64,000 bases of DNA from Ylistrum balloti (Eukaryota), in NCBI RefSeq assembly GCF_031769215.1, contig NW_026781904.1, positions 248,001 to 312,000 on the forward strand. Direction: 5' to 3'. The position numbers and the translations under genes are program-made. This document shows positions 1 to 60,977 of this stretch, piece after piece. The notes under the pieces were generated by a model. It saw only the letters and a program-made list of their open reading frames with translations, was not told the DNA's origin and ran no database searches. Within the stretch, counting starts at the first letter, position 1; the number at the start of each line of letters is the position of its first letter.

Positions 1-1329
1 TAATGGGAAGGTGATATTGTCGACCGCATACCATGTTTGTCTCTTAGATATATAATTAGACAAAAATAACTCGGACGATCGTTACCAATGTCGACCCCCT
101 TACCTCGTTTATCTTTGATATTTACTAAAGCTGGGGATATTCAAACAGGGAACTCTAACATCGAAATATGTATGTGCATTGCTTTAGGCATTGGAGAGTT
201 GATATTACCAAGAATGGTGTCTCTGAGGTAGGGATTGCAATATTGGAAATTGTCAACTATGTAACTATGTGTACACTTGTATGTCCAGAACTTGATCTAA
301 CTGCAGCTTGAATATACATGTATTTAATAAAGGAATAATTAGTACTGACTATGTAACTTATGCATTAGTTTCCTTTCTAAGTTGTCCTATAATCTTCGCC
401 CTTAAGTGGAAGCTTATGCCTTCCTTTAGTGCAATCTCTACTGTTGGGTACAGTATTTAATTGAGGGGCCGGAGTGAAAGACTATAAAAAGACATACATG
501 TGAACAGTACATTTTAATACAAACTTAGAGTTAGTTACATCAGAGCAAAATAACGAACCATAACCTTTCTATTTTCTACGTCTTTATTTTATCCTCGAAA
601 ATAGAAAGAAACAGAAATCCCGTAAAAAATAATCACATTGACAGTATATGATTGATTTTTTTATTAATAGTACCTAAGGACCCATATTTTATTAACCAAT
701 TAAAAATAATTTTTAACATGAAACTTAAAATAAAATGATGCTTTTATACAACCATACGTTTAGGTTATAATTAGACAAGAAGCGAGTGATCTCTATGCTT
801 GGTAAATGGCGGTATCACCTTCAGCATATCTTCGATGTGAACCCAAATATATATTCAGTTAGTTCTCCACCAATATCATACTGTATTTTAATCTCAATTG
901 ATCGAGTTAACATTCTATTTAGGATAATTGTTCAATCTACAATTTAATTTCATGAGTCCTTTTCCAGCTTATTGTTAAAAACAACGGGCCCTATAATGGA
1001 TATGAAATATCTACAGAAATTGATCACAGCACACTTTTAAATAGTTTGTGCAGTATTGATATAAAATATCTGTACTTGAATAGTTTACAGCACTTGACAA
1101 TACACTTACACCATACGTATCAAAGGATGAGGGTGTGTTATCAAACAAACCCTACAATATAGAATAGTAGTTCTTATAACACAACACAATGATCTGTAAG
1201 TGCAGGTTTATTGATCTGGGACCGTGAATGTTTTCTCTCTGATCTATTAATTTGTTTTTTGGTTTTTTTTTTTTTTTCATTCTTGGGATTCCTCGTCTTT
1301 TTGATGTTCATTGAGTCGGATCCCAGTAC

Positions 1330-1500
1330 GTCAGTGCTAGTAGGCTCCACACTGTTCATTTGTCTGATGAAAGTGACCGTGTCGTCATCGAAATATCACA
1401 CTCTAATCTTTTACTGGTTTTGTTAAAAGATCTTTTTCTATTGACATTACCAACCCGATGAAAATATTCCAACATCTCCCACGGAATACTATTATGGGAC
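1330..1500 (+). mobile_element. Arm of a dispersed repeat carrying a minimal hammerhead motif (Penelope-like pseudo-LTR candidate), copy 1
   Basis: Aligns by eye with 13431-13558 (reverse complement), 46286-46360 (reverse complement) and 46524-46690 (direct), e.g. gtcatcgaaatatcacactctaa and ttgacattaccaacccga. Contains CTGATGA (1364-1370) - hairpin - GAAA TAT C. Confidence 0.6.
1361..1400 (+). ncRNA. Minimal type I hammerhead ribozyme motif with intact catalytic core (stem II closing pair decayed)
   Basis: tgt CTGATGA a [agtgac cgtgtc gtcatc] GAA ATAT C aca: core CUGAUGA, one extra A, stem II with 5 of 6 pairs, GAA, palindromic 4-nt stem III ATAT, C17, and 3-bp stem I tgt/aca. Confidence 0.55.
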
Positions 1501-12459: not shown

Positions 12460-12790
12460 AGGAAGGAAGGAAGGAAGGAAGGATGGATGGAAGGAAGGAA
12501 GGAAGGAATTGTGGAAGGAGGGAGNNNNNNNNNNNNNNNNNNNNNNNNNNNNNNNNNNNNNNNNNNNNNNNNNNNNNNNNNNNNNNNNNNNNNNNNNNNN
12601 NNNNNNNNNNNNNNNNNNNNNNNNNNNNNNNNNNNNNNNNNNNNNNNNNNNNNNNNNNNNNNNNNNNNNNNNNNNNNNNNNNNNNNNNNNNNNNNNNNNN
12701 NNNNGATGGATGGAAGGAAGGGATAGACAGGAAAGAAAAGAAAGAGATAAACGAACAAACTGATAAACAAAAAAGAAATAAATAAACGAA
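12460..12790. repeat. (GGAA)n/(GGAT)n microsatellite interrupted by a 180-N assembly gap (12525-12704)
   Basis: Directly visible in the sequence. Confidence 0.97.
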
Positions 12791-13430
12791 TAAATAATGC
12801 AGCTATTTCATCGCCAAAGTTAATGAAACACTGTAGCAACCTTGATGAAGGGCTCACTTTTGAACCTGCAGGAAACAAGGCTTGTTAAACATACGAACGT
12901 TTGTTATAGTTAGTAAGGTATCGATCGCTTCGACGTTAAAACATTTTCACTATACCATACTGGAGTGAAGTGTAATAAAACCAGTGTGATGTTAATTGAC
13001 GAGGTGGAAGCGATGGAATTATCGCTTATTTATTTTTCCTGTAAATTACAAAACTCTCCTGTGTGTTTTCATTCGTTCATTTATAGAATCTATAACACTC
13101 GAAAGATCACCGATTCCTGAACTAGCTCGTTGGCATTTCCTAAACGACAAGAATGATCTTTTCACGAGTGACATGTAATTTTTAAAGTAAGAATGATTAT
13201 GATAAAGTGAAATTCAGAGAAAATGGATTTTACTAGAATGCTGATGGTTTTGCATGTACACTATAGTTTATGTATGAAATTGCGATCAATTTTTTTTACA
13301 TATTTTTGTTCTATTCGGCATTGAAGTTTATTTTTCATTTTATGCAAATCGAACTGTAACGAAGTTCTGTATGTACGTACACCGCATGAACGTCCGTGTC
13401 CTTTTACGTAATCATTACCACAAATCGTTA

Positions 13431-13785
13431 GCTAGATGAGAAATTCTTACACAACCAGTAGGAGGTTAGAGTGTGATATTTCGATGACTACATGGTCACC
13501 ATTATCAGACACACGGCCATTGTGGAGCGTGCTAGCACTGCTGAGTAGTGTACTAGAGGGTAAGGAATCGACAAACATATTCAGCTGTACTTTAATCCTA
13601 GGTACACTAAGGTCAAAAAAAGTGTGACGAGATGGTAAGGAATCGACCAACTGTTTCGGCTGTGCTATAATCCTATGTACACTAAAGGCGAAAATAGTGT
13701 GACGAGATGGTAAACAGACTATAGACGAAAACATACATTAGATGGTAATGTGGCACTGTAGTTAATTTGTCTTTGTTTAGAAATA
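13431..13785 (-). mobile_element. Hammerhead-bearing repeat, copy 2: left arm plus loop with a duplicated 75-bp unit
   Basis: The reverse complement of 13471-13514 reads gtgtgt CTGATAA t ggtgac catgta gtcatc GAA ATAT C acac. 13559-13785 matches 46362-46500 directly. The 75-bp unit starts at 13559 and 13634, with a third unit start at 13709. Confidence 0.6.
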
Positions 13786-16700
13786 AAGACAAATCTATTG
13801 AAAAAAACACCAGTTTGAGAAGGGTCACAGAATGATGTATAATTCTGTCGCGTCATATTGATTAAACACGCAAAAAAAATGTTCTATTGAAATAGTAAGA
13901 AATTGAGTACGGTTTTAAATGTCATTGCTGAAGATTGGAAATAAAGTAATCTTACCCCGACAATTTTCTGTCTCGCCCGGAAAGAAGTGAAGCATTCTAT
14001 TTCACTTTTACAATATAACGTCAGGTCGTATACTCTATTCCGCTAATGGATCGGTTCCTGCCAGACGTGCTGTAATAGCAAGCCGTGTCCATTGTGACTA
14101 TAACTTTGTAAAACGATGGACCTTGGATGTGATAAATAAGCCAGGATCCTAGCTGAACTACAAATGCATTGAAGACGACCTCAGACGTAACAAACTCGAG
14201 TTAATAGCCTTCGTAAACCTAAGTTCGCTGATACCGATTCTGCTACAAGAAAACGAAACGAGGGTCCGAGTAAGCGCATTTATCTAAAGCCGATATGATC
14301 TTTCTATATAGACGTGCTTGTTCATCCAGTGTTTTTACATCTAGGCTATTAAACATTCATCGTCCCCATTTCTCCGATAATACTATTCCCTATAATGATT
14401 AAGAGACGTTTTGCCTCAGTGAAGCACGCGTTATTGCCGTGTAAATAATTCAGTTATTCGATTGGCTGGGGACTCGAGTTTGGACACGCGCCATGTGGTA
14501 TGATAAGGGGAGATAATTAGGAAACTCCATCGGGAAGTATGTAGTCATGCACCAATAGCGTCAGAACCGATATTACAGAGTGTAAACATTGAATTTCGAA
14601 AATAAACCTATACTCGATATTTACATTTGAATTAACTCATGTGTTTATAAAAACACATCGAAAAAATGTGTCTGAGGCATAAATCCTCGTCTTTTATTTT
14701 CAACCTATGTACAATATATGTAGTTTTGGATTCGAATTTTACACAAGGTATATTGTGATAAAGCATATGAAATGTAATTTAAAAAAACCTGAACATGACA
14801 TTTGGATGTTTTAACAACACATGTGTTGTATCATTCTCTCCAATAAAGTTGTTTACGTCAAAAGACAAATTACACAATTTTTAAAATAAAATTTTATCAT
14901 GAATTTGTTAAGTGTCTGTACCAAATCAATTTTAATGTACATGTATTTGAGTGATATATAACAGGGGGGAAAAGTTGATTTAGAAATTTTTTAAAACTTT
15001 TATAAATCTATCTTGTGTATAGGAATGCATGAATTTTATAGCGAGAATATTATTTAGCAATGGAATTAAGACGAATTCTTTGTTTAAAACATGAAGTTTT
15101 GGGAGTGAAATAGTTGGAGAGTAAGAATAGTGTAGAAGGAGAAGAAAACGGATTATCTATATATTCATGTCCTTGAAATTATTAACATTGCTGATAATTC
15201 TTTTTGGCTTCCGCACATTTAATGCTTTTAGATAGTGTTTCCGCTTGGGAAGGCATGCGTGTACAGGTCCCAGCAGTTATACAGAGACTTGTGTCAATAC
15301 ACAAGTAGATACAGGTGAGACAGATAGACTTAGTCAGTGACAAAAAGGATTAAAACATCAACACCATTCTTTCTACAACTACTACGGGAATTTTACCAGG
15401 TACAGGTTTAAATTTGCACACGATTCGATTTGTAAATATAATTATCTGGAAAAAAGGTAGGTGGAAATTTCTAAAACTGCTCATATTTGTATTGAGTTGG
15501 GGATTTTTTTTTCAGATAATATCAATATATTTTATATGTAATACTGACTCATGCCTACGTGACTTGTCAGGTAGCCAAAAATGCAGCTTGCATAACGTTT
15601 TGTTCACGTTTAAAAGTGTCACCAAAGTTGTAAAGGTGAAACCATGGGTTTAAGGACGGGTGGGTATGAGTCAGGTTTCTGTAGCAGCTGTAAATATTGC
15701 TACTGTTTAATTCGATACTATTTCGTCTGGCCATGCCTAGAAATACAATGAATTGGATTTCATAAGGTCTACTTTATCTCTCAAATCAATAAGGCTTATA
15801 TGTGTTTCTGGCTTGTTATCACGAAAGCTTTTTCAATTCGATAGACAAACGATATTCATCCACCATATTTTTATTTCAATTTCCTCAAGTGATTTGTACA
15901 GCGCACTGTTGCAGAGAAATTTTTACCATTTCCTGTTTTGTTTTCATTTCAGTCATAAAATTTTATTATCTCCATAAACTACTATGAAACTTTAATTGTG
16001 GTATGAAACAATGATTAGAACTATCCTTGCCAATTGTGAGAATTAATTGTGCTTTCGTTGATATAAGAATACTGAATTAAGAATATTGTGGTGTAGTATG
16101 TATATATATTGGAGAAAATGCTGAATATCGACCAGCAAGTGTTTTACAATATTAATGCGTGGTTATTCCATAATCAGAAAATATTATGTTTTTTCAAGAA
16201 AATATGTACAGTACAGTTTATTAAAGCCGAGGCAGATGCACAGAATATTCTTGTTTAGGTAGGTGAATTTACGACAAAAATGTGTCCTAACATGTCATTT
16301 CTGTGAGTGCTCTCACACCAGTGGTTCAGTAGCACACAAAGTCGATACATGTAAATACGTGTACATAATGCTTATTCTCGTGTCGTGCGTGAATGTCACT
16401 GCAAAAAGCGCCCTCTGGATTTGTCGATAATTGATTTATGTCTCAGTATGATATGTGCATTAAGTATGCATAAATGTTTTACTGACATACATGATACCAT
16501 TGATGTTTTGTGTGTAATTATGTAAACGTGGCCGTGACCCAAATGTATAACAGCTTAAATCAATTTACATGATTAAGGATATCAATTTGTAATAATCTTT
16601 TTTAACAGGGGAAATGCTTACGTATTGACATTCTGCTGAAGGGCGACATTGTACGGTAGCGTCAATCTGTAAGCTTGAATTTGACTTACAAACTGTAGAA

Positions 16701-17700: not shown

Positions 17701-18788
17701 AAAGCTTATATTAATTTTTTTCAATTTTCATTTGGTTGTTAAGAGGGGGCGATCATTTCTTGTAATACTCCTCCTCAGATGGCAGTTCATGATCTGGTAA
17801 TACACAAATGACTTTAGAATGGTTACACTGCAGCAATGTCCTCACATTGTATGTATCACACGCTGGTATTCAGTATTGTTCAGTTTATAATTTCACCGTT
17901 CTTTGACAAAATGTGGTGTGTTTCAACTACTACACGGAGATACGCCTCATAATTATCTTGATGATTGACAGGGCGATACACTCAGCAAATAGTACAAAAA
18001 ATTGCTGTGGTTTGGGAAACTATAAAAATTCAATTTATCCAGCATTGTTCATCACGCGCATGCGCGTTCTTCTATACAGTTGTTTGATGCAATTAAAAAG
18101 CAATATGAAAATTTCAAAGAGAAAAAAGTCTTAGTACCTTCTAACGATGATAAGTTTTAAAAGTGTTGTAGTCAAATATGTTCCTCTAGATATTAGATAT
18201 TGTACACGCATGGGCAGTTGATTGATTCTAACAGTCCTTGAAAACAATATGTTTACACGAATGTATACTACTAAACCCGACAATGACAGATGTCAGTTTC
18301 CGATTTTATCGCGTTAAAGCGAGGTAAGTTGTACATTGTGACCCAAATGATGATATCAATAATATAGACATATTTTTTTGTTATACTGGTGCTACGGGCC
18401 GTGTATTGACTCATTTAACTCTCTTTCGCACTCATGGTTTTTTAAATGTTAATATTTATAAAAGATGACACGCGCACATTGATCTACGTCGACATCTGGT
18501 CTACAGGATTTGATTTCCCTGCGGAGGGATTTATCACGCACGTGAAGCAGTGACCTGGAAGGACTACTTTACGCCGGTCTTGCCTTTACCTATATCGGTT
18601 ATTTGTCATTCAAAAAATGATTTTGCTTCATAAATAATAAGTAAAAAGGACACGCTTTAATGAATACATTCTTAAAAAAAGTAGATTTCATATTCCGTGG
18701 AATGGCTGTAGTTTCATATCATGGTGACATACATTGAGGATACTCAACATATAAAAAGTATGTCATGACATCGATAACCTATATATTT

Positions 18789-19615
18789 ATTTAAATATCG
18801 ATATTGACCTACACTTATTTAGATATCGTTGATGACCTACACTTATTTAGATATCCTTAATGACCTACACTTATTTAGATATCGTTAATGACCTACACTT
18901 AATTTAGATATCGTTAATGACCTACACTTATTTAGATATCGTTAATGACCTACACTTATTTAGATATCCTTAATGACCTACACTTATTTAGATATCGTTA
19001 ATGACCTACACTTATTTAGATATAGTTGATGACCTACACTTATTTAGAAATCGTTGATGACCTACACTTATTTAGCTCTCGTTAATGACCTACACTTATT
19101 TAGATATCCTTAATGACCTACACTTATTTAGATATCGTTGATGATCTACACTTATTTAGATATCGTATTTAGATATCGTTAATGACCTACACTTATTTAG
19201 ATATCGTTAATGACCTACACTTATTTAGATATCGTTAATGACCTACACTTATTTAGAAATCGTTGATGATCTACACTTATTTAGATATCGTTGATGACCT
19301 ACACTTATTTAGATATCGTTAATGACCTACACTTATTTAGATATCGTTGATGACCTACACTTATTTAGATATCGTTAATGACCTACACTTATTTAGATAT
19401 CGTTGATGACCTACACTTATTTAGATATCGTTAATGACCTACACTTATTTAGATACCGTTGATGACCTACACTTATTTAGAAATCGTTGATGACCTACAC
19501 TTATTTAGGTATCGTTGATGACCTACACTTATTTAGATATCCTTAATGACCTACACTTATTTAGAAATCGTTAATGACCTACACTTATTTAGATATCCTT
19601 AATGACCTACACTTA
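18789..19615. repeat. 28-bp tandem repeat, about 29-30 copies
   Basis: Unit atttagatatcgttaatgacctacactt with few variants (gttgat, cctt, aaat) and one partial unit near 19165. Confidence 0.97.
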
Positions 19616-22900: not shown

Positions 22901-23290
22901 ATGAACTCTGATTGTATTTGTGAGGTTAGTACATGTGTTGAGCGCTTGTGTTTTCTTCAGGCTATTTATTAGGGCAAGTCTCCATGAGATAATACGGAAC
23001 TGAGGTCGACTTTATAGTGTTACCTCACTGAAATACACTGCCAAAGTTTCGTTTTGAAAACTCTCGGCACAGGGGACATAATTCAAAATTTTCCTCACAG
23101 AGGCAAACGTCCATATAAAGAGTTATAGTTTTATATAGTTTCAATGGAGACATCCGGTATGCTTCTTACACCCTACCCTCAGTGCTACAATCATAAATGG
23201 ACATGAAAAATTAAATACAACCCTTAAATACAACGTTAAACCAGATTTACCAAACAAAAACACATATTATCACTTTAAACTCAAAGAATT

Positions 23291-23558
23291 ATTCGCTTTA
23301 GCAACTCCTACTTGTCTGAGTGATGTAAATAGATATTCGCTTTAAAAACTCCACACTTGTCTGAGTGATGTAAAGAGATATTCGCTTAGCGACTCCACAC
23401 TTATCTGTGTGATGTAAAGGGATATTCGCTTTAACAACTCCACAATTGTCTGAGTGATGTAAAGAGATATTCGCTTTAACAACTCCACACTTGTCTGAGT
23501 GATGTAAAGGGATATTCGCTTTAACAACTCCACACTTGTCTAAGTGATGTAAAGAGTT
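23291..23558. repeat. 45-bp tandem repeat, 6 copies
   Basis: Unit attcgctttaacaactccacacttgtctgagtgatgtaaagagat starting at 23291, 23335, 23380, 23424, 23469 and 23514. Confidence 0.95.
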
Positions 23559-24018
23559 ATTGTAAGTTACGTTTCCTGACACTAGTTAAACTCTCTAATT
23601 GCCCTTGTAACCGTTAATTCACGGTACAGATGAATCCAGATTATGACTACACAAGGCGTACATTATATAATTTCTAGTGAATACGGACGTCCTATAGAGA
23701 CATTAGTTTACCCCAGGGGGTGAGAGGGGGGAATCCCCACCAGGTGAAAAGACATTGCTCAAACTTCTCCAATATTGAGATCCGCTATGTCTCCAACAAC
23801 GGATTTTTCATTTTCCTTTTATCCTTGCTTACCTTCCTAGGAATGTAACTTATTATAATTGCTAGCATTGTTCATGTGGATTTAGTGACTTGCTGATTTT
23901 ATTTAATTGACGTCATACGATTCTATATATCCGGATAAGTGTAAAAAAAATTTCTAAAAATTATAATTTTCTTATTCGCAGATGACGTTTGGCGTTGGAG
24001 GCTCCATCAGACTACAAA

Positions 24019-24747
24019 ATGGATCCTTTAACTTTGGGAACAACAACGTTGTACTGGATGACTCTGATCTGCTCCAACATGATTGTCCAATCAGCTGCTT
24101 CGTCTGATCTGAATTTAGCAGCCGCCATCCCTTATGAAATCGTCACACCCTCGCCTAGTGACCCACTCAATGTCGTACCATATATGGTAACGACTTCGTC
24201 TCCAAATGAAAACGAGATTCTCGAAGTCACGTGGGAGAACAGTACCACATCATCCATCGCAATAAGTTGGCAATTTTCCAAAAGCTATAGGTCGAACGGC
24301 ACATTTCTGGGAACGCGTGTGGAATATTTCCTTAAACATGGTAAATTCAGATCGCACATATTACTTCCCTCAGTACACTCGTTTGTGTTTGAAAGCCTGA
24401 AGGTTGCCACTACATACAGATTTTGTGTTACAGCCTTCGAGAGTGTACACAATGGATTGTCAAGTGATACGCTTGAGCATGCGCGATGCTTTCGGTTACA
24501 AACTATTCCCTACATCCGGCGGGACACCGTACTTATTCTACTCCTGACGTTAAGTTATTTCCTGTTCATGGGTTGTATGGGATACTCTCAGTGGCGAAGA
24601 CGAGTTGCCCTCATTCGGAAAAGAGTGCGACGTGCTTGTGAAAACTCTTCGGAGCCCACAACACCAGTATTGCGATGGAGAGAGGTGGAAGAAAGGCAGC
24701 GACTATGTTTTCCGAGCTCCATAGAAGAGACACCACGTGATCTTTGA
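24019..24747 (+). CDS. Type I membrane protein, 242 aa: signal peptide, S/T/P-rich stalk, one fibronectin type III domain, TM helix, short basic cytoplasmic tail
   Basis: Uninterrupted ORF. ATG in aaaATGG context 37 nt after a splice acceptor (ttttcttattcgcag, ending 23981). FN3 hallmarks SIAISW, LKVATTYRFCVTA and C..L.T; TM TVLILLLTLSYFLFMGCMGYSQW followed by RRR; N-glycosylation sequons NST and NGT. Confidence 0.85.
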   Translation: MDPLTLGTTTLYWMTLICSNMIVQSAASSDLNLAAAIPYEIVTPSPSDPLNVVPYMVTTSSPNENEILEVTWENSTTSSIAISWQFSKSYRSNGTFLGTRVEYFLKHGKFRSHILLPSVHSFVFESLKVATTYRFCVTAFESVHNGLSSDTLEHARCFRLQTIPYIRRDTVLILLLTLSYFLFMGCMGYSQWRRRVALIRKRVRRACENSSEPTTPVLRWREVEERQRLCFPSSIEETPRDL

Positions 24748-30289: not shown

Positions 30290-32405
30290 TTTTATAAGAA
30301 GTTCAAAAAGAGTTCTAACATTAAGCCTAACGCTAGTCTTGAAGATTTTTACCGACATTTAAAAAAAATAGCGGTTACGTATGAGGAGAGAAGTGATGTA
30401 CCGGAAAATTATGACTCTGATACTTTATACGACGAGATAGACTTCGAAATTACGGCAGAAGAATTTGAATGTCATTAAAAAGTTAAAAAGGGAAAAAAGT
30501 CATGGCACTGATGGAATACTTAATGAATATTTGATAGAGTTTAAGTACGTTTTTGTTCCCATTTTACAAAAGATGTTTAATGCTGTTTTTAATGTCGGTT
30601 ATTTCCCAAAAGTGTTATCTAATGCTTTGATTGTTCCAATATTCAAAAAGGGGATACTTCTAATCCTGGTAACTATCGTGGAATCAGTTTGCTTAGTAAC
30701 ATGTTAAAACTTTTTACGGGAGTTTTGAACGCCAGGCTAGTGAAATGGGCGGGCGATTACAGTATAATTACTGATGCCCAGTTTGGTTTTCGCCCTGGGT
30801 TGGGCACAGTAGATGCCATATTTGCACTATATTAATTGATTAACAAATCCTTATCCAATAAGAAAAGGCTATATTGTTGTTTTGTTGACCTTAAGAAAGC
30901 CTTCGACTCGGTTGATAGGTGCAAGCTACGGTATAAGATTTCTAAGCTTGGGGTCAGAGGTAAACTTCTAGATGTGATTAAATCGTTGTACACTAATATT
31001 AAATCAAGTGTTATGGTAGACAGGAATCTGTCGAGTTTTTTTGAAAACCAAACCGGAATTTTACAAGGGGAAATGATTTCCCCGATTCTTTTAAGTATGT
31101 TTGTAAATGACTGTGAAATGGATTTCCTTAACAACGGCGTTCAGCCTTTTGAATTGCAAGAGCAAGGCGTTATTTTTACTCATGTACGCTGACGATATGG
31201 TGCTGTTCTCGGAAAGTGTTGAAGGTCTACAGCATATGCTGGACAATTTATTATCATATACTAGTAAGTGGTCTATGTCGGTTAACGTTGAAAAAACAAA
31301 AATTGTGGTTTTTAGAAAGTCAGCAGTACTACTGGAAAATGAACAATGGCAGTATAATGGGGTAACACTTGAGTCTGTGAACTCCTTTTCTTACTTGGGA
31401 GTGAAACTTAATTATAATGGAAATTTTAACTTAACACAGAAACAGTTGGCCTCACAGGGTAGAAAGGCGCTTTTTTCGCTTAAGCGAGCCTGTAAGCCTA
31501 TGTTGTTGATTTTTTGTACCTTGTTGTCACTTTTTGATACGTACGTTTGCAGTGTAGCTAACTATGCCTGTGAGGTGTGGGGCTTTCACAAAGCACCGGA
31601 TATTGAACAACTCCATCTTGATTTTTGTAAAAATATTTTAGGAGTGAGTAGAGCCACTCCAAACGCAATGATATACTTCGAACTTGGTAGATTTCCTCTT
31701 TTAATTTCTAGAAAAGTTCGAATTTTGAAATATTGATGTAAGCTATTAAGTACAAACAACTGTATTTTAAAACCATGTTATCAAGATATGTATCGGGAGT
31801 GTGAAGCAAACCCACATTGTAAAAACTGGGTTATATCTATTAAACACGAACTTGGTTCTCTCGGTATGTCTAATTATTGGCTGTCGCAAAATAGTTTAAA
31901 CACCCAACAGTTTCTTGCTTAAGCAAGGGAGAGGCTCACTGATATTTTTAAACAGGATTGTGAAGCTTTTTTCGACACTACACAGAAGTGTCTGTTTTAT
32001 AAACATATTGTTGATCATGTCTGCTTACAACCTTATTTAAGTAAATGCTTTCCGCTTAAATATAAAAAGGAAATTGTAAAATTTCGTCTGTCTTCACACA
32101 ACCTGTTAATAGAAGCTGGAAGACACCGAAAAATCCCCCGTAACTTCAGATTCTGCCCATTGTGTAAGTCCGACGTAGAGGATGAATTTCATTTTATTCT
32201 GAAATGTCACTTCTTCTCAGAGTTAAGATTTAAATATATCAAGACATACTTTATCTTCCGGAAATTCTAAAGAATTAAATAAACGAGGAAAGTTCATTTA
32301 CTATGCAAATTTACTGCGATCCACTTTGATGGCTAATAAATAGTCAATTGACATGTAATATTGTTCAATGTCTTTTTTGTAAAGATGTGGCCATGAATAA
32401 TTAAA
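30290..32405 (+). mobile_element. 5'-truncated RTE-X-type non-LTR retrotransposon ORF2 (RT plus C-terminal CCHC finger), disabled
   Basis: Stitched translation: KSHGTDGI, VPIFKKG, NYRGISLL, QFGFR, FVDLKKAFDSV, GILQGEMISP, YADD, YLGV, YACEVWG, ELGRFPL, FRLSSHNLLIEAGR, CPLCKSDVEDEFHFILKC. Several frameshifts and stops. Confidence 0.9.
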
Positions 32406-34868: not shown

Positions 34869-35055
34869 AAAGAAGTGGGTCAATGGTTGAGCCATAAGCG
34901 ACCACTTTAATTACTTCCAATCAGTCACCGCATTTATACCGAAGACCACCCTTCTGCTTCCTGCTGGTCAAGTATCTGGACAGCAGCTTCACAAACCATT
35001 GTCTTCAGTCTTCTTGATCAGCAGGCTGTCAAATGCATTAGACTAGCCTATCAGT
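34866..35055 (-). pseudogene. Decayed CR1/L2-type reverse transcriptase, downstream part
   Basis: Minus strand: YVATTLIG*SNAFDSLLIKK...YLTSRKQK...D*LEVIKVVAYGSTIDPLLF, matching the YVAxILMDLSKAFD, YLTNRKQ and GVPQGSILGPLLF motifs. Confidence 0.8.
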
Positions 35056-37174
35056 GTGGTGGCGACATACCTATGGCGACGACATACTCATGGCGGCGAC
35101 ATACCCATGGTAACAACATATCCATGGTTGCGTCATACCCATGGTGGCAACATACCAATGGCGACGACATACCCGTGGTGGCGCCATACCCATGGTGGCA
35201 ACATATTCATGGTGGCGACATACCCATGGCAGCGACATACCCGTGGTTGCGTCATACCCATTGTGGCGACATTCCCATGGCAGCGACTTACTCCTGGCGG
35301 CGACATAATCATGGTGGCGACATACTCATAGGCGACATACCCATGGTGGCGACAAACTCATGGTTGCACCATACCCATGGTGGCAATTATACCCTTGGCG
35401 GCGACATACACGTGGTGGCGACATACCAATGGTTGCGACATAATCATGGTGGCGACATACCCATGGTGGCGACATACTTATGGTTGCGCCATACCCATGG
35501 TGGCAATTATACCCATGGCGGCGACATACCCGTGGTGGCGACATACCCATGGTGGTGCATACACATACTCATGGCGGCGACATACCCATGGTGGCGTCAT
35601 ACACATGGCGGCGACATACCCATGGTGGCGACATACATGAGAGCAACATGGCGGCGACATACCCATTGCGGCAACATACTCATGGCTGCGACATACCCAT
35701 GGTGGTGACATACACATGGCAGCGACATACTCATGGCTGCGACATACCCATGGTGGTGACATACACATGGCAGCGACATACTCATGGCGGCGACATACCC
35801 ATGGTGGCGTCATACTCATGGCGGCGACATACCCTTGTTGGCGTCATACCCAGGGCGGCGACATACTCATGGTGGCGACATAAGCATGAGAGCAACTTAC
35901 TCCTGGCGGCGACATAATCATGGTGGCGACATACTCATAGGCGACATACCCATGGTGGCGACAAACTCATGGTTGCGTCATACCCATGGTGGCAATTATA
36001 CACTTGGCGGCGACATACACGTGGTTGCGACATACCAATGGTTGCGTCATACCCATGGTGGCAATTATACCCATGGCGGCGACATACCTATGGCAGCGAC
36101 ATACTCATGGCGGCGACATACCCATGGTGGCGTCATACCAATGGCGGCAACATACCCATGGTGGCGACATACCCATGGTGGCGTTATACCAATAGCCGCG
36201 ACATACCCATGGTGGCGTCATACCCATGGTGGCGACATACACATGGTGGCGTCATACCCATGGCGGCGACATACCCATGGTGGCGACATACACATGACAG
36301 CGACATACCTATGGTGGCGACATACCCATTGTGGCGACATACACATGGCGGCGTCATACCCATGGTGGCAACGTACTCATGGTTGCGTCATACCCATGGT
36401 GGCAATTATACCCTTGGCGGCGACATACACGTGGTGGCGACATACCAATGGTTGCGACATAATCATGGTGGCGACATACCCATGGTGGCGACATACTCAT
36501 GGTTGCGTCATACCCATGGTGGCAATTATACCCATGGCAGCGACATACCCGTGGTGGCGACATACCCATTGCGGCAACATACTCATGGCTGCGACATACC
36601 CATGGTGGTGACATACACATGGCAGCGACATACTCATGGCGGCGACATACCCATGGTGGCGTCATACTCATGGCGGCGACATACCCTTGTTGGCGTCATA
36701 CCCAGGGCGGCGACATACTCATGGTGACGACATAAGCATGAGAGCAACTTACTCCTGGCGGCGACATAATCATGGTGGCGACATACTCATAGGCGACATA
36801 CCCATGGTGGCGACAAACTCATGGTTGCGTCATACCCATGTTGGCAATTATACCCTTGGCGGCGACATACCCATGGTGGCGACAAACTCATGGTTGCGTC
36901 ATACCCATGGTGGCAATTATACACTTGGCGGCGACATACACGTGGTGGCGACATACCAATGGTTGCGTCATACCCATGGTGGCAATTATACCCATGGCGG
37001 CGACATACCCATGGCAGCGACATACTCATGGCGGCGTCATACCCATTGTGGCAACGTACTCATGGTGCCGACATACCCATGGTGGCGACATACCCATGGT
37101 GGCGTCATACCCATGTTGGCGACACACCCATTGTGGCGACATACACATGGCAGCGACATACTCATTGTGGCGCC
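35056..37174. repeat. 17-bp GC-rich minisatellite, about 124 units, with higher-order duplications
   Basis: Unit ggtggcgacatacccat (10/17 GC). The 17-bp period explains the rotating 17-aa peptide ORFs in all frames. Confidence 0.97.
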
Positions 37175-37510
37175 AATCCTTAACAAATCTCACCAGTGAA
37201 TGAACTCAAAATCCTAGTCAGAAAACTACCAGAAAAGATTATAAAATATTAAAAATTGATCCAGCAGCTCTCAGATATTTTAGAGAATCATGTTAGTATA
37301 CTCACTGGCCTTTTAATGTTAAACATCATTTTTCTTTAAAAACTGGAACAGCCTCTGAGCCTGGTGGGAAAGGAACTTTGTGTAACAATTCAAAGACCTT
37401 ATAAAATGAAATTTACATGATCACAGCATGCTGTAATATCTTAGGAAAAATCCCGTCAACATCTGTAGATTTCCCTGTATATCTTGTACAAACTGATTAT
37501 TATCTTACTC
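37175..37510 (-). pseudogene. Decayed CR1/L2-type reverse transcriptase, upstream part
   Basis: Minus strand: GKSTDVDGIFPKILQ...FP...AVPVFK...RPVSILT*FSKISE...LVRFVKDWRHNEYVAA, running straight into the array. Confidence 0.75.
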
Positions 37511-38761
37511 GGCAAATCTACAGAGATTGTCTGAAATGATAAACTATGAAAAACTAAAACACCATGAACTGGTACGGAACACAATAAATACAATATTCAA
37601 GGAAGGAAGAGTTAATTAAACATAAGGCTTAATTATAATTGTCGCCAAATATTTTGTCACGTCTGTTCACCACAATGAAATACACAAGTTATAAATATTG
37701 CAGAACGCTCGCTTTAAATGGCTTTGACGTAATTCATGTTATACGTGATATTTTTGTCACTTTTCTCTTTCTTCACAAGTGTTATGTTTAGGTTTTGCTT
37801 TGCAAGCTGCCCCGCTAAAATCCTTATGAATAATTACCATGGCACGTGAAGGCACAATTAAGATAAAAATGGCATGTGATGTGTCACAGGGATTTAATGA
37901 TATACAGTTATATATAGATACTTATCATCGCTTTGCTTTTATAATTAATAAACAGGAAATGATTAAAACAAAAAGTCCATTACGTCTTGCGGGGACTTTC
38001 TGATATTATGACAGTAAAATACGCGTAGTGATACGGAGTGGTAGAAATGTAGAAGAGTTGTCTCCCGTCTTACGTTGTTACAAGGATCTCTTTCAAGAAC
38101 AATGGATTTTTGCCCACGAAACAACTCAAATTAAAGTGGGTGATGTTTGTAACACTTTGAATGACTACCCATAATATTTAAAGATTTTTGGTGCACTCAC
38201 ACTGAAGTACATGCTTCAACTCTTAGAAAAATTGTCTTCACTGAGAAAATGTGAATAAATCGTACTTTTTTTTTTTTTTTTTTACAATATTTTTAAACAT
38301 AATTACCACTATATTGTCAAAGTGACTCTTGTTAATCAAACATTATGTATAATTTGGTAATGTATGCGATGGTTTTAGTCCTTTTTAATACGTTTTATTA
38401 TACTAAATGGGTCGCAGCACAGGCCCTATGGATCTTTTAAATGTTTTAATCATGGGTAGTCATTCAAGGTGTCACAAATACCACTCATTTTTATTTGAAT
38501 TGGTGCGTGGACATAATCACATTGTTCCTGAAAGAGATCCTTTCACCAGACATGTCTACATGGTCAACAATTTATTTTATCATACTACAAATGTACACAT
38601 TTTCTGCACTTTTCAAAGTTATTAGATACAAAATTGGGGACATTTAAATGTCTGTATGGCGTACATATAATTCTTTTACATAATCCGAAATGTACATATG
38701 TTATAATACTGCGAACAACTTTCACGAATGATACATTCATATACATATGATTTTACATATA

Positions 38762-41848: not shown

Positions 41849-42022
41849 CAGCCAAATTCGTTTCTTCGAAATAGTCGAGACCGCGGGAAACCATCGTGTA
41901 ATCCAAGTATTCCATTTAAGCGAGTTCAACTGGATGTATTGAAGTTTGTCCGATACGGACGAAATACTTCGAATTAAAAGATTTTTCGAGTTAAATGAGT
42001 TCGAGTTAAAGAGGTTCGATTG
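41849..42022 (-). mobile_element. Tc1/mariner-type MITE, same family
   Basis: Reverse complement caatcgaacctctttaactcgaa...ttaattcgaagtatttcg...cttcaatacat...ttgaactcgcttaaat.gaatact.g.attacacga; colinear with 59747-59922. Confidence 0.7.
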
Positions 42023-44402: not shown

Positions 44403-46285
44403 CCTGATCACGATAACGCATTGTTTTCTAGAAGAAGAAGAAGATGAAGAAGATGATGCATCGGTACATATGTATGTGCCGATGTTTTGTTAAAATCTTG
44501 CAATATATAAAACAAATTTTAAAAACACGCTTCAGTACAGACATGTGCATATTGCTGACCAACTTGCGCTCGATTTTAGACAATGCCTATTTCATAATAT
44601 ATAAAAAAGAAGAAAAAGCGAAAAGCACATGACTGGAAATATGGTATATCATAGACGCGTGGTTTGACGTCAAACTTCCGTTTTGGATCGATTTTCTATG
44701 TCACTTCCGGTAATGAGGAACGGAAATTGATTCTAACACATTTGACAATGACATGTTAGCACATCGGCTACTGTCGGGGAGGGGAAGCCATTATATTCAT
44801 CCCTTCCAGATGACGCGCACGCACTTCCATTTTCTCATCGATCCACACTCGGGTGATGGTATGTTATATATACAGTGAACGGATGTATAACCAAAGCCGT
44901 ATCCTTTTGCCTTTGATCATTCCGTGTCGTGATAATGCAAGTCTAGCCAGAATTTTATTTTCCAATTTTGATTTAATCCATCAAACACAAAGATGGTTTC
45001 GGGGCCGCCATATGTAAAATCGATAACTTTTTTTTGAAAAGCATACAAGATCTTCCTTTAGTTGACAAGACACAGTTAGATACACCCCCGTATATGAAAA
45101 TGACATACAATAGAAACGATCTGGAAAGCGACAAAACAAAAAGGATTTCGAATCATATTAAGAATCTCTGATTTAACACAAATGAATACCATCTCATAGA
45201 AACGCAATATTGGAAAAACGGTTTTCTAGCTTGGATCCTCTTTTCTATTGGAACAAGACAAATGGGCTTCTACTAGCGTCATTTTCATTGAACAAGAACC
45301 GGAAGTGGCTTCAAAGTTTAAAAAGATCTTTTACAGTATTGTAGAATAACTTACACTCCGAACAAGACCATCAGTCATTTCGATAAAACCTTAGCAACCT
45401 AGCAACAGAACCATAAAAGGACTTATGAATGGCCAAAAATGTGAGGAATGCTACATAATTACCTTAGCCAGAACAGGTAGCAATATCCTGAAGTTGCGAC
45501 TTTTTAGTGAAGTCGTAATTTGATGACATGTAAGTCTACTTGTTACGATCTATTGTGAAATCTCGGCCATGGCCTACTGCAGCAACGTCGTCATTGACTG
45601 TCAAATCAATACTCCAAAACATGTCACGTGCTTTCTTTTCGACAGAGTTAGCAATACTGTAGTTTTTTCTGTCTGAATATGATTCCTAGCCTCTTTGGAA
45701 AAAGTTTATCTGAGTCAATCAAATTTACATCTGATTTCCATATTGATCTAGAAAACGGAATGAATGAAACAAGAAAATAGCATAGCACTTGTAAAAGCTT
45801 GTTATAAATTTATAATAGAACCTACTAAATGAGCGAGACTCGTTGTAGCGGTAGAACAAGAAGCCATATTCTTGTACGAGAAAGCAAAACTTGAAATAAA
45901 AATAACTGATTCAATTTGTTCAATTTAGAGAATATAATTTTCATTACCTATAAATATTCAGGTATCTATATACTGTTTTGAAAAGAAGTGGTGTAGTTTG
46001 ATGCATTACGTGTATGGATGAGGCGACTAACGTGTAACCACTTGGAAGTGGTCGCGGCGGTGTCTTTGGGCTTGTGGATGCTGTATCATAAAACGTTATA
46101 GCCGTGTATCATATTTCTGAAATAAAGCATATAGAACCCAATGTGGAACCGCTTTGTGTCCTGTACTACGGATACATCTTATGCTATATTTATATATACG
46201 TGTTTTCATATTCATAGATAATGTGTTGGTTATGTTAATTAAATTATGTCCAATCCCTTTGCATGTTTTGGCAATAAAATATATG

Positions 46286-46690
46286 TTTAAATGAAAAATA
46301 CGATGACAACACGATTACCTTCATTAGACAAATGACCAGTGTGGAGTGTAGTGAACGGAATGGTAAGGAACTTTTTTGGTTGTACTATAATGCTATGTAT
46401 TGTGAAGTTAAGATAGTGTGACGAGATGGTAAAATGGTCTTTTAAAAATATACGATATGCTAACCAAGTACTGTAGTCGATTCGGCTACTCTTTGTTTAA
46501 TACATGATCCTCGATATGCGAGAATCTCGTACACTACACACATTAGTGCAAGTACACTTCAAACTGGTCAATTTCCTAACCAAGATGACAAAGTAGTCAT
46601 CGAAACACCATATTAAAACTTTCTACTGATTGTGTTGTAAAAATTTCTTTCTACTGACATTACCAACCCGACGAAATTTTTCCGAAATAT
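46286..46690. mobile_element. Hammerhead-bearing repeat, copy 3: two inverted arms around a ~163-bp loop
   Basis: The reverse complement of 46286-46360 aligns with 46524-46620 (one ~17-bp gap). The right arm holds the perfect hairpin gatgac-aaagta-gtcatc followed by GAAA (46584-46605). Confidence 0.65.
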
Positions 46691-47472
46691 AAGATCTTGC
46701 ATATTGATAAATAATTTATCTTATTTATTGATTTATCAGTTCTGTTGTCTAAACTTGTTCTTTTGCTTTAAGTCCCTAAATGATTTTTTGAGTTTCAAAT
46801 CACAAAATTTGTTGGCGCTTGGAAAGTGCATACATGACCACTGCAAAAAGCAAACATTCATGTGACGTTGGCCTGCTAGATATTTCTTTAAATCTACAAG
46901 CCGAAAGACGTTTTTGTCGATTTTCATGATAGGATTCATGTAAAGACGATCCTGTAGTACATTATCATTGTCATGTTCAGATAAATCTTCATTTTACAAG
47001 TCGGACTTCGAACATTTTTCTTCTCTTCAAATATCTATATTAAATATTTGGCCTGACTAAGAAAGACGCGAAATGTATAATTTGTGTCCATTACGTTTGA
47101 CATTGAAAACGATGCTTTCAGACACTTTTGACAAAGAGATATATATTAACTGCTTGCTAAACATTTATTACAGTCCAAAACATGACCCGAGACCACGGTC
47201 AATGAAATGGTCGTCTTTGGTATAAAAATGCCGACATTCTTATACACATAATGTATCAAATCAGTTTGGTTGCGTATATTTTCTCTCTGGACAAATGTTT
47301 TTGAAGGCGTCTGCGATTTTTCTGCTTATTTATCTTGTTTTTTTTATGATATAAACAACATATTTATCACATCACCAAAAGTCCTTTAACAGCTAGGAAC
47401 CTTACAGAAATCTAAAGTCGACGTTCTCGTATTAGTAACAGCGTCAGATTTAGTGACTAAAGTATATGTATA

Positions 47473-48850
47473 CTGAGAGGAAAAAGACGCAATTAGGAAT
47501 TTCCAGGTCAACTACGGGAAATAGAAAAGGGTTTTATAATGTAATTATGGTGAAACTTGAAGATAGTTGACCACTCTGTCATATACGAGAATTTCATTCG
47601 TGTACGTGAAGTAAACCTTTTAAATTTGACGTTGATTCAAGAGCACCCCACTCAAAATGAAGTGTGTTCTGGACCCAACAATAACTGCACGAACTCTTTT
47701 GTGCATTGAATTGATCGGGGTATTAACCCTCCTCATTGGTATACGATTCCATTCCTCATCCAGCGCCAACGCCAACTGAGCGACGTTGATTTGAGGATTC
47801 GGCCTACGTCTTATCCTTCTGTCCAACTCGTCCCATAAATGTTCTATTGGGGAGAGGTCAGGAATGTATGGGGGCCAGTCTAGGGTGGGGACATTGTTTG
47901 CTGCGAGATAACCATGGCAAACCCACGCTACATGCGGCCGGGCGTTGTCCTGCTGAAACGTCAGTTGACGCTGCTGTACTAGAGGAACAACTTGCGGCGC
48001 TAGGACTTGATCTCTATAGCGGAAGGCCATGAGAATTCCCTGAATAACGATCAGAGGAGTCTTGATACCGTATGCAATCCCTCCCCATACCATGACCGAT
48101 CCTCCTCCAAAGCGGTCATTCTCTAGCATGTAAGCGTCTGCATAGCGCTCGTAGGTACCTCTATATACACGACGACGTGGACTCATCTGAGAACAGGACC
48201 CTTCTCCAACGTTGCATTGGGAAGCGTCTTACGGAATATGCGTTTAGCCATTACATTCGTCTGGCACGTCGCCGCGCATTAAGCTGTGGTCCGCCGCGGT
48301 CTTAGACCGAAGGCACCCAGTCGAGTACGCACTGTCTTTGGATCAATTGGAACTTGATAACGCCCAATTGTGTTCCTTGCTGTTTCCGTGGCCGTCAGAA
48401 AGCGATTGCGTAGGTGCGAAAGTCGCATTTCCCTATCCTGCCGACGCGTCGTTACACGAGGGCGACTGCTTCGGGGACGGTCTACAACCTCTCCGGTGAC
48501 ATGTAGTCTTTGGATGAGACGGAAAATGTTCGATGGATGGACTCCAAATTGATTAGTGACCTGATTTTGCAGGGTACATTGCATAAGAAGTGCAATGGCA
48601 CGACCCCTGTCAACTTCGGACAGTCGTAGATTTTGAACCAATCCTTTATACTGGGTTCGAGATATCGTGTTTTTGTCTCTTATTCTTTTGCACAAGCGGC
48701 GTGCGCAGTTTAGTTATGCATCAGTGATTTTAATACGGTACCATAGGGACCTAACTCAAATGCACACATTTGTCAAGTTTCAAGGGTGCACGTCAAAGAT
48801 TTGATTTACAATATTAGCTTTCTGCTAATTGCGTTTCTTTTTCCTCTCTG
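47473..48850 (-). mobile_element. Full-length (1378 bp) Tc1 DD34E transposon, transposase disabled
   Basis: TIRs ctgagaggaaaaagacgcaattag (47473-47496) and ctaattgcgtttctttttcctctctg (48825-48850), each flanked by TA. HTH region RLSEVDRGRAI...GRP-like SRPRVTT; FSDES, VMVWGGI, QQDNARPH, then 34 residues to PDLSPIEHLW. Deletion, stop and frameshift between 48186 and 48290. Confidence 0.95.
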
Positions 48851-50802: not shown

Positions 50803-51413
50803 GGACAGCACATTTCAAGGATAGCTTAACAACGTTCAAGGATAGGATAACGCCTTCCAAGGATAAGACAACACATTCCAATGATAGGTCCACGCATTCC
50901 AAGGATAGGACAACACTTTCCAATGATAGGACAACACTTTCCAAGGATAGGACAACACTTTCAGGACAACACTTTCCAAGGATAGGACAACACGTTCCAA
51001 TGATAGGGCAACACATTCCAAGGATAAGACAACACTTTCAGGACAACACTTCCCAAGGATAGGTTAACACATTCCAAGGATAGGAAAACACTTTCCAATG
51101 GTAGGACAACACATTCCAATGATAGGACAACACATTCCAAGGATAAGACAACACAATCCAAGGATAGGTTAACACATTCCAAGGATAGGTTAACACATTC
51201 CAAGGATAGGACATCACTTTCCAATGGTAGGACAACACATTCCAATGATAGGACAACACATTCCAAGGATAAGACAACACTATCCAAGGATAGGACAACA
51301 CGTTCCAATAATAGGACAAGACTTTCCAATGATAGGACAATTTCCAATGATAGGACAACACATTCCAATGATAGGACAACACATTCCAATGATAGGACAA
51401 CACATTCCAAGGA
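50803..51413. repeat. 21-bp tandem repeat, about 29 units
   Basis: Unit ccaaggataggacaacacatt / ccaatgataggacaacacatt, with a few shortened units. Confidence 0.95.
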
Positions 51414-51865
51414 TCTTCAAAGGATATATAGTTCATCCATTCACACAAGCACAACTGCCATAAATGTCTGTCTAGTACGATTTAAATTCTACACCATGTC
51501 AACACTACTTCTACTTCCATGTTATAATTGAGAAAGGTTTTGACTTGGTACCGTTTCATAATATAATTTTTATCAATTATATAAACACGGTTTATAATGA
51601 AATGATAAATAAGAACAGCAATTGGCGAAGAAAAACAACAATAAAATGATTTCATGTTTTGTTTTTTCTTATTGGCTGGCGTGTTGGGGGGTCCTGCCAT
51701 TAAAAAGCTGCTGTTTTAAAAGGCTGCTACTGAAACCAAAAGATCGCGGTTCTCTTAAAATATCGACGTCATGCTGAACGTAGTTCTCTAGAAAAAAAAA
51801 CCAGCAATACACTTTAACCTAAAATAATCTGCGTGGACATGGGTTTACAATTAGTTATATAATTT

Positions 51866-52372: not shown

Positions 52373-52478
52373 ATATGAGAAAGAGCATTTTATTCATAGG
52401 ACCTAACAAAGAATATTCTTTAAGAAAAAAAAACAATAATAAGAACCATAGTCAACAGCGGGTTGTTTTCATAAAATC

Positions 52479-60950: not shown

Positions 60951-60977
60951 TGTTTGTCAACAGATCACGAAAAAGAC

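What the first reader, a model, noticed from the sequence alone, without database searches (positions are those of the whole stretch)
1361..1400. Dispersed repeat family whose consensus is a minimal self-cleaving hammerhead ribozyme
Seen: four homologous arms, all read in arm orientation. 1361 (+): tgt CTGATGA a agtgac cgtgtc gtcatc GAA ATAT C aca. 13514-13471 (-): gtgt CTGATAA t ggtgac catgta gtcatc GAA ATAT C acac. 46331-46290 (-): tgt CTAATGA a ggtaat cgtgtt gtcatc GTA. 46576 (+): CTAACCA a gatgac aaagta gtcatc GAAA. Their consensus TGT-CTGATGA-A-GRTGAC-loop-GTCATC-GAA-ATAT-C-ACA has every hammerhead element: core, G10.1-C11.1 stem II, palindromic stem III, an AUC cleavage triplet and a short stem I. 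Stem II pairing persists across ggtgac/gatgac variants. Established: Penelope-like elements and metazoan retrozymes carry minimal type I hammerheads with palindromic stem III that cleave as dimers, often with one extra base after A9. Inference: this is an uncharacterised ribozyme-bearing mobile family. Each copy here has at least one damaging change; the 1361 copy keeps the full core.
Basis: partly seen in the sequence, partly recalled or inferred. Interest (0 to 1): 0.85.

Follow-up and report, generated by a model that had tools for sequence, protein, structure and literature searches.

The report
Dead Penelope-type minimal hammerhead repeat copies
Four old, broken copies of a small mobile repeat carry the remains of a minimal self-cutting RNA (hammerhead ribozyme) of the type long known from Penelope-like retroelements of animals, so the motif is real but ordinary and inactive here.

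Summary
Four homologous arms (57-80% identical) lie at 1328-1480(+), 13390-13797(-), 46215-46512(-) and 46525-46692(+).

The hammerhead resemblance is not chance. Against a 26-constraint minimal-hammerhead descriptor, the only sites in the window with 4 or fewer defects are the 1361 and 13511 copies, each with one defect. In 2000 shuffles no site had 1 defect or fewer.

The two defects differ (A at 10.1; A at G8), so the common ancestor of these two copies was very probably a complete motif. The other two copies are heavily decayed.

The architecture matches the "min-HHR" of metazoan Penelope-like elements (Cervera & de la Peña 2014):
- one extra base after A9
- G10.1-C11.1
- a 6-bp helix II
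- a 3-4-bp helix I
- a palindromic AUAU with no loop 3
- AUC at the cleavage site

The copies share a 3' end, are cut short at different 5' points, and one pair lies head-to-head. That is the Penelope style of insertion.

Not supported: stem II covariation (0 compensatory changes), any Rfam hammerhead hit, a Penelope ORF in the window, or activity.

This is a new member of a known kind. Earlier notes of this scan flag many similar hammerhead repeats elsewhere in this genome.

The parts
1328..1480 (+). Copy c1: a 5'-truncated 3'-terminal fragment (~150 bp) of the repeat family
   Evidence: BLASTN matches it to 46540-46688 (72%) and 13540-13439 (80%). See also the alignments A1 and A2 and nhmmer E=2e-51.
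1361..1400 (+). Hammerhead-like motif of c1. Helix I 1361-63/1398-1400; core 1364-70; extra A 1371; helix II 1372-77/1384-89; GAA 1390-92; palindrome ATAT 1393-96; C17 1397. The predicted cut would fall after 1397. Its one defect is A at 10.1 (an A.C pair).
   Evidence: 1 defect of 26 constraints. The hammerhead-type fold is -3.1 kcal/mol against an MFE of -6.3 kcal/mol.
13390..13797 (-). Copy c2: the longest copy, comprising the 3' arm plus about 240 bp of upstream family sequence
   Evidence: (13621-13779 matches 46338-46499), alignment A3.
13471..13512 (-). Hammerhead-like motif of c2. It has a 4-bp helix I (GTGT/ACAC), a 6-bp helix II, the ATAT palindrome and C17. Its one defect is A at the G8 position (core reads CTGATAA).
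   Evidence: The hammerhead-type fold is -8.0 kcal/mol against an MFE of -10.9 kcal/mol.
13547..13713 (-). Internal 75-bp tandem duplication (2.2 units, 83% matches) just upstream of the c2 arm. Copy c3 has a single unit.
   Evidence: (D18).
46215..46512 (-). Copy c3: the left, longer member of a head-to-head pair. Its 3' end is approximate. The hammerhead remnant at 46330->46299 reads CTAATGA in the core, has an A.C mismatch inside helix II, reads GTA where GAA is expected, and has lost the palindrome.
46525..46692 (+). Copy c4: the right, 5'-truncated member of the head-to-head pair. The hammerhead remnant at 46573-46612 reads CTAACCA in the core, keeps helix II intact (GATGAC/GTCATC), keeps GAA, and has lost the palindrome and helix I.
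   Evidence: hairpin -7.7 kcal/mol, z = -2.6.

Best explanation
These are four old, inactive insertions of a short non-coding retroelement module. They are most likely 5'-truncated or non-autonomous derivatives of a Penelope-like element (PLE). The 3' part of the element carried a minimal type I hammerhead ribozyme (min-HHR).

How it would have worked (inferred from the literature, not shown here). In a live element the sense transcript folds helix I (3-4 bp) and helix II (6 bp) around the CUGAUGA/GAA core. There is no loop 3, so the palindromic AUAU at positions 15.1-16.1 can pair only with the same tetranucleotide of a second ribozyme. Cleavage after AUC therefore needs a dimer, which in practice means tandem copies. 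The cleaved RNA would be processed to unit length and copied back into DNA by a PLE reverse transcriptase and GIY-YIG endonuclease supplied in trans.

What the sequence shows. That way of insertion leaves a shared 3' end, variable 5' truncation, and often an inverted 5'-truncated twin beside the main copy. All three are seen here. All four copies are now dead:
- c1 has an A.C pair at 10.1-11.1.
- c2 has A at G8.
- c3 has A at G5, reads GUA where GAA is expected, and has lost the palindrome.
- c4 has three core changes and has lost the palindrome.
For: 1. The match is far beyond chance. c1 and c2 each meet 25 of 26 descriptor constraints, and no other site in 128 kb of strand meets even 22. Shuffles gave 0 of 2000 windows with 1 defect or fewer. 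My analytic estimate for a perfect motif is about 8e-7 per window.

2. The two defects are at different positions, so the common ancestor of c1 and c2 was complete. c3 and c4 support G at position 8 and at 10.1.

3. Features that a core-box search does not force all match the hallmarks listed for metazoan PLE min-HHRs in PMC4209133:
   - an extra base after A9 in 4 of 4 copies
   - G10.1-C11.1 in 3 of 4
   - a 6-bp helix II with 22 of 24 cells paired
   - a short helix I
   - palindromic positions 15-16

4. Insertion anatomy. The copies share a 3' part but start at different 5' points: about 150, 168, at least 290 and at least 400 bp. c3 and c4 lie head-to-head with their hammerhead remnants 245 bp apart on opposite strands. 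This matches the 'inverted 5'-truncated copy adjacent at the 5' end' of PLEs (PMC8557442) and the 'dual min-HHRs 100-700 bp apart in opposite strands'.

5. The hammerhead is on the strand whose 5' side is truncated, as expected for a retroelement's sense strand.

6. Nothing points to a coding sequence. There was no protein relative among 1.84 billion representatives and no meaningful Pfam hit.
Against: - No copy is intact, and only four copies could be examined.
- There is no compensatory change in either helix.
- G5 is a 2:2 tie in the consensus.
- No Rfam hammerhead model matches at any threshold tried. However, a complete motif of the same build in metagenome contig L002 is missed as well.
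- There is no PLE ORF and no tandem copy in the window.
- The hammerhead fold is 3 kcal/mol worse than the MFE in both c1 and c2, and the AUAU self-duplex is worth only -1.4 kcal/mol.
- The descriptor geometry was fitted after seeing the family. I allow about a tenfold look-elsewhere factor for this.
Confidence: 0.77

Rival explanations
1. The element is a non-LTR retrozyme in the strict sense. It would be a small (~250-400 nt) non-coding element that lives as tandem genomic repeats and as abundant circular RNAs, like the mussel retrozymes, and not a truncated Penelope end.
For: - The longest copies are about 300-400 bp and non-coding. That is the size of the mussel retrozyme units of 350-390 bp (PMC7229834).
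- A 2026 preprint argues that animal retrozymes derive from PLE pLTRs, so the two readings overlap.
Against: - There is no tandem unit of the family in the window.
- The 3' end does not run on into the 5' start, so there is no sign of circular permutation.
- The ribozyme is the loop-less minimal type with a 3-4-bp helix I, not the canonical type I with loop 1/loop 2 contacts reported for invertebrate retrozymes.
Confidence: 0.12
2. The hammerhead look is a chance resemblance inside the inverted arms of a foldback or MITE-type DNA element, and has no ribozyme ancestry.
For: - c3 and c4 form an inverted pair, and c1 and c2 are inverted relative to each other (I2).
- There is no covariation.
- There is no Rfam hit.
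- A bacterial coding region (L003) matches the core plus stem II pattern by chance.
Against: - Two homologous copies with 25 of 26 constraints each, against 0 of 2000 shuffles.
- The arms of the c3/c4 pair differ in length and join at their 5' ends, with the shared 3' ends pointing outward.
- c1 and c2 are solo arms 12 kb apart with their 3' ends converging, so they are not the termini of one element.
- The L003 chance hit lacks helix I.
Confidence: 0.07
3. The arm is the decayed 3' end of a protein-coding sequence, and its conservation is at the codon level.
For: - One sense frame is free of stops through the motif in all four copies. It reads roughly S-A-S-x-L-H-T-G-H-L-S-D-E-G-D-R-V-V-I-E.
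- pN/pS in that frame is 0.66, against 1.0-1.2 in the other sense frames.
- c2 has a 95-codon ORF.
Against: - phmmer of the 95-aa ORF against 1.84 billion proteins found nothing.
- Pfam gave nothing above noise.
- Open runs of this length are common in this window: 31% of codon positions lie in runs of 44 or more, and 6% in runs of 97 or more.
- c3 reaches its open frame only through a frameshift relative to c2.
- The antisense frame that shares the wobble positions gives a similar pN/pS of 0.55.
Confidence: 0.04

Closest known systems
Minimal hammerhead ribozymes (min-HHR) of metazoan Penelope-like elements (Cervera & de la Peña 2014, PMC4209133; dimer cleavage reviewed in PMC6765202)
   Same: - Type I topology with CUGANGA and GAA boxes.
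- An unpaired base between A9 and 10.1.
- G10.1-C11.1.
- A long helix II (6 bp) and a short helix I (3-4 bp).
- No loop 3, with palindromic positions 15-16.
- The motifs occur mostly as single copies in truncated elements, with some pairs a few hundred bp apart on opposite strands.
- The motif is expected to need a dimer.
   Different: - No PLE ORF or pLTR context can be shown in this window.
- All copies are mutated.
- Helix III is an all-A/U tetranucleotide (AUAU), so the dimer contact would be very weak (-1.4 kcal/mol).
- With four copies, no covariation is visible.
Drosophila virilis Penelope hammerhead variant and the related 'small palindromic helix III' variants (PMC4209133)
   Same: - A 6-bp helix II with a bulged base at its 5' end.
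- A very short helix I.
- A 2-nt palindromic insertion between A15.1 and U16.1.
   Different: - The D. virilis motif has a bulge inside helix II and only a 2-bp helix I.
- It sits next to an intron end in a defined pLTR.
- It is nearly invariant among copies, whereas these copies are 20-40% diverged.
Non-LTR retrozymes of invertebrates, for example Mytilus galloprovincialis (Cervera & de la Peña 2020, PMC7229834)
   Same: - A bivalve host.
- A non-coding unit of a few hundred bp.
- A type I hammerhead.
- A low G+C content.
   Different: - Retrozymes are tandem repeats with more stable, monomer-active hammerheads and abundant circular RNAs.
- Here the copies are solo or inverted, and the ribozyme is the loop-less minimal type.

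Membership tests
Metazoan PLE min-HHR | Catalytic boxes CUGANGA and GAA | tested here: met
   Both boxes are intact in c1. c2 has one change (position 8), c3 has two (position 5 and GAA reading GUA), and c4 has three in the core. Parsimony gives a complete core for the ancestor of c1 and c2.
Metazoan PLE min-HHR | One unpaired nucleotide between A9 and 10.1 | tested here: met
   Present in 4 of 4 copies: A, U, A and A.
Metazoan PLE min-HHR | Conserved G10.1-C11.1 pair closing a long helix II (6-8 bp) | tested here: met
   G-C is present in c2, c3 and c4, and A.C in c1. Helix II is 6 bp, with 22 of 24 cells paired.
Metazoan PLE min-HHR | Short open helix I (type I) and an H17 cleavage site | tested here: met
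   UGU/ACA in c1 and GUGU/ACAC in c2, with AUC before the cleavage site in both. Lost in c3 and c4.
Metazoan PLE min-HHR | Palindromic positions 15.x-16.x with no loop 3 or a tiny one | tested here: met
   AUAU in c1 and c2, absent in c3 and c4.
Metazoan PLE min-HHR | Consensus families with covariations and compensatory changes in the helices | tested here: inconclusive
   There were 0 pairs with changes on both sides and 2 one-sided changes. Four sequences are too few to decide.
Metazoan PLE min-HHR | Location in the pLTR or 3' part of an element encoding RT plus GIY-YIG endonuclease | tested here: inconclusive
   No PLE ORF is in the window. The only RT is a LINE-type fragment at 30465-31736, plus a Tc1-like DDE remnant. 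The literature says most genomic motifs sit in truncated copies. The insertion anatomy (5' truncation and a head-to-head twin) fits a PLE.
Metazoan PLE min-HHR | Self-cleavage as a dimer | not testable with these tools
   Only thermodynamic folding was possible. The hammerhead fold is not the MFE, and the AUAU duplex is worth -1.4 kcal/mol.
Rfam hammerhead families (Hammerhead_1, _3, _II, HH9, HH10) | Covariance-model score at or above the gathering threshold | tested here: not met
   There was no hammerhead hit at the gathering threshold. There was none at E<=10 on the whole window, on 301 nt or on 81 nt. A complete motif of the same build in L002 is also missed, so these models appear blind to this minimal type.
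Non-LTR retrozyme | Head-to-tail tandem units of 170-400 bp, each with a type I hammerhead | tested here: not met
   There is no tandem copy of the family and no circular-permutation signal.
MITE / foldback DNA transposon | Equal terminal inverted repeats at both ends of each copy, flanked by target-site duplications | tested here: not met
   c1 and c2 are solo arms. The c3 and c4 arms differ in length (at least 290 bp against 168 bp) and abut at their 5' ends. No target-site duplication could be defined.

The most novel reading that the evidence does not exclude
The family is a scallop-specific, non-autonomous, Penelope-derived lineage whose ribozyme module repeatedly seeds local minisatellites. 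Two features in this window suggest it: the 75-bp duplication inside c2, and the 45-bp array at 23283-23561, which aligns to the arm as a shortened derivative. If so, ribozyme modules would be a recurrent source of satellite DNA in this genome, and perhaps still active elsewhere as tandem dimers.
Probability: 0.15. Interest if true: 0.45.

Novelty: new member of a known kind. Interest (0 to 1): 0.22.

Why it matters
It adds one more decayed family to the large catalogue of Penelope-type minimal hammerheads in invertebrate genomes. I found no paper in the held library on hammerheads in scallops.

Its practical value is for annotation. These arms should be masked as retroelement remains, not read as MITEs or as genes. 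It also shows that Rfam models miss this minimal class, so descriptor-based searches are needed. It opens no new question by itself.

Tried and rejected
- **Rfam scans.** Run at the gathering threshold and at E<=10 on the whole window and on 301-nt and 81-nt pieces, plus the 45-bp array. No hammerhead model matched. I treat this as weak evidence, because L002 is missed too.
- **Coding reading.** Rejected after the frame and pN/pS analysis, phmmer against 1.84 billion proteins, and Pfam.
- **Circularly permuted or tandem unit.** The 3' ends do not align to the 5' starts.
- **The arm as one more diverged copy of the upstream 75-bp unit.** Not significant, except weakly for c4 (13 of 500 shuffles).
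- **More copies from public collections.** An exact 21-mer found nothing in the metagenome collection. A degenerate motif pattern found two unrelated metagenome contigs (L001, L002), one bacterial chance hit (L003) and nothing in viral contigs. None is homologous to the family outside the pattern.
- **The scan's own index by sequence.** It returned nothing.
- **A first, looser descriptor that required pairing at 10.1-11.1.** It found no complete motif in the window.

Full report
**1. What is there**

The window is AT-rich (about 35% G+C) eukaryotic DNA, full of minisatellites and transposon debris. Earlier notes of this scan call the genome the scallop Ylistrum balloti; I did not verify that.

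They belong to a real repeat family.
- Self-BLASTN links 1328-1475(+) to 46540-46688(+) at 72% identity.
- It links 1332-1433 to 13540-13439(-) at 80%, and 1345-1431 to 46346-46263(-) at 74%.
- It also links 13621-13779 to 46338-46499 at 67%.
- A profile built from the four arms finds these four places and nothing else in 64 kb.

**2. Anatomy of the copies**

All four copies share the same 3' part (arm orientation is the hammerhead sense strand) but begin at different 5' points.
- c1 starts at about 1328 and is about 150 bp long.
- c4 starts at about 46525 and is about 168 bp long.
- c3 runs from about 46512 down to about 46215.
- c2 runs from about 13797 down to about 13390. It contains a 75-bp tandem duplication (13547-13713), of which c3 has only one unit.

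c3 and c4 lie head-to-head, with their 5' ends abutting at about 46512/46525 and their 3' ends pointing outward. c1 and c2 are solo copies 12 kb apart with converging 3' ends, so they are not the two ends of one element.

A shared 3' end with variable 5' truncation marks copying from the 3' end of an RNA. An inverted 5'-truncated copy directly beside the 5' end of another copy is described as typical of Penelope-like element (PLE) insertions (PMC8557442).

**3. Is the hammerhead look more than chance?**

I wrote a 26-constraint descriptor with these parts:
- helix I of 3 bp
- CUGANGA
- one extra base
- G10.1-C11.1 plus five more helix II pairs
- a loop of 4-8 nt
- GAA
- an A-N-N'-U palindrome
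- a non-G base at position 17

On both strands of the window, the only sites with four or fewer defects are c1 (start 1361) and c2 (start 13511). Each has exactly one defect. In 2000 shuffles of the window, no site had 1 defect or fewer, and sites with 2 or fewer occurred 0.001 times per window.

From base composition, I estimate a perfect motif of this geometry at about 6e-12 per position. That is about 8e-7 per window and about 0.01 per gigabase. The geometry was chosen after seeing the family, so I allow a tenfold look-elsewhere factor.

The two defects differ: A at 10.1 in c1 and A at position 8 in c2. c3 and c4 carry G at 10.1, and c3 carries G at position 8. The common ancestor of c1 and c2 was therefore very probably a complete motif.

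c3 and c4 are much more decayed.
- c3's core reads CUAAUGA. It has an A.C mismatch inside helix II, GUA where GAA is expected, and no palindrome.
- c4's core reads CUAACCA. Helix II and GAA are intact, but it has no palindrome and no helix I.

**4. What the motif does not show**

- There is no covariation. On the four-copy alignment no pair has changes on both sides. Helix II is paired in 22 of 24 cells, with two one-sided changes (G.U to A-U and C-G to U.G) and two breaks.
- No Rfam hammerhead family matches at the gathering threshold, at E<=10 on the window, or on 301-nt or 81-nt pieces around c1.
- That negative is weak. A metagenome contig (L002, 930-969) carries a complete motif of the same build, and Rfam misses it too. 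Its build is GAAC, CUGAUGA, U, GGUGAC, a 5-nt loop, GUCAUC, GAA, ACGU, C, GUUC. Its helix I, palindrome and C17 were not part of my search pattern.
- A bacterial hit to the same pattern (L003) lies in an apparent coding region, lacks helix I, and is best read as chance.
- Thermodynamically the hammerhead-type pairing is not the preferred fold. It gives -3.1 against -6.3 kcal/mol for c1 and -8.0 against -10.9 kcal/mol for c2. The AUAU self-duplex is worth only -1.4 kcal/mol.

**5. Rival: a coding sequence**

One sense frame is open through the motif in all four copies, and pN/pS in that frame is 0.66. Several results argue against a coding reading.
- The antisense frame sharing the wobble positions gives 0.55.
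- Open runs of this length are common here.
- c3 reaches its open frame only by a frameshift relative to c2.
- The 95-codon ORF of c2 has no relative among 1.84 billion protein representatives and no credible Pfam hit.

I reject this reading.

**6. Comparison with what is known**

Cervera and de la Peña (2014, PMC4209133) defined the metazoan PLE "min-HHR". [quoted passage not shown] G10.1-C11.1 is highly conserved, and positions 15.2-16.2 are palindromic with no loop 3.
- Such ribozymes should act only as dimers and cleave poorly in vitro.
- Most motifs are single copies in truncated elements.
- Some occur as pairs 100-700 bp apart on opposite strands. c3 and c4 are 245 bp apart.
- The D. virilis variant has a 6-bp helix II with the bulged base, a 2-nt palindromic insertion in helix III and a 2-bp helix I.

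The family here fits every structural hallmark that can be read from sequence.

What cannot be shown in this window is the PLE context.
- The only reverse transcriptase is a LINE-type fragment at 30465-31736.
- There is a Tc1-like transposase remnant at 47620-48695.
- There is no GIY-YIG ORF.

The family does not meet the definition of a non-LTR retrozyme. There is no tandem unit and no circular-permutation signal. A 2026 preprint nonetheless argues that animal retrozymes derive from PLE pLTRs.

**7. Mechanism**

The dimer-dependent cleavage, the processing of the element RNA and the reverse transcription in trans are all inferred from the literature (PMC4209133; PMC6765202). None of it is shown here. 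All four copies are inactive by sequence.

**8. Verdict**

- It is wrong that covariation supports the motif, and it overstates the novelty.
- This is a new, decayed member of a known kind.
- The same scan has already noted many hammerhead repeats, 45-nt hammerhead minisatellites and inverted Penelope-type pairs on other pieces of this genome, and the c3/c4 foldback in this window.
- I folded only the natural copies, not a repaired or consensus version.

Noticed in passing
window 23283-23561 (+): A 45-bp minisatellite of 6.2 units with 88% matches. Its unit shares CTCCACA..TGTCTGA with the arms and aligns to arm c2 as a shortened derivative (score 33 against 17.2 +/- 3.6 in shuffles, 1 of 500). 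It has no intact hammerhead boxes and no Rfam hammerhead hit. It may be a collapsed relative of the 45-nt hammerhead satellites noted elsewhere in this genome.
   Followed up: partly
window 13547-13713 (-): A 75-bp tandem duplication (2.2 units, 83% matches) inside copy c2, just upstream of the ribozyme arm. The homologous copy c3 has one unit, so the duplication arose locally at the DNA level.
   Followed up: partly
window 30465-31736 (+): A LINE-type reverse transcriptase remnant. Pfam RVT_1 matches two adjacent ORFs (E = 3.5e-10 and 8.6e-11), and a YADD box is present. It is not Penelope-type and is unrelated to the arms.
   Followed up: partly
window 47620-48695 (-): A Tc1/mariner-like transposase remnant, with weak DDE_3 (E = 3.4e-6) and HTH_29 matches. 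It lies 1 kb to the right of the c3/c4 pair.
   Followed up: no
window 23989-24747 (+): A 252-codon open frame with a fibronectin type III domain (E = 6.6e-7). It is probably a host exon.
   Followed up: no
window 34982-37200; 18787-19615; 50762-51414; 51794-52421; 60851-61925: Five large minisatellites with periods of 17, 28, 21, 32 and 30 bp. The 17-bp array raises local G+C to 45% and carries long spurious ORFs.
   Followed up: no
window 38082-38175 / 38449-38542, and 41858-41986 / 59784-59912: Two other inverted-repeat pairs: 94-nt arms at 82% complementarity, 273 nt apart, and 129-nt arms at 78% complementarity, 17.8 kb apart. They are probably other transposon families.
   Followed up: no
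L002 930-969 (metagenome contig Ga0126343_10293145): A complete minimal hammerhead of the same build as the family here, in an AT-rich, ORF-poor contig. It has a 4-bp helix I, an extra U, GGUGAC/GUCAUC as helix II, the ACGU palindrome and C17. It is not called by Rfam. It is probably eukaryotic DNA in a metagenome.
   Followed up: partly
window 12525-12704: A run of 180 N (an assembly gap or mask), left untouched.
   Followed up: no
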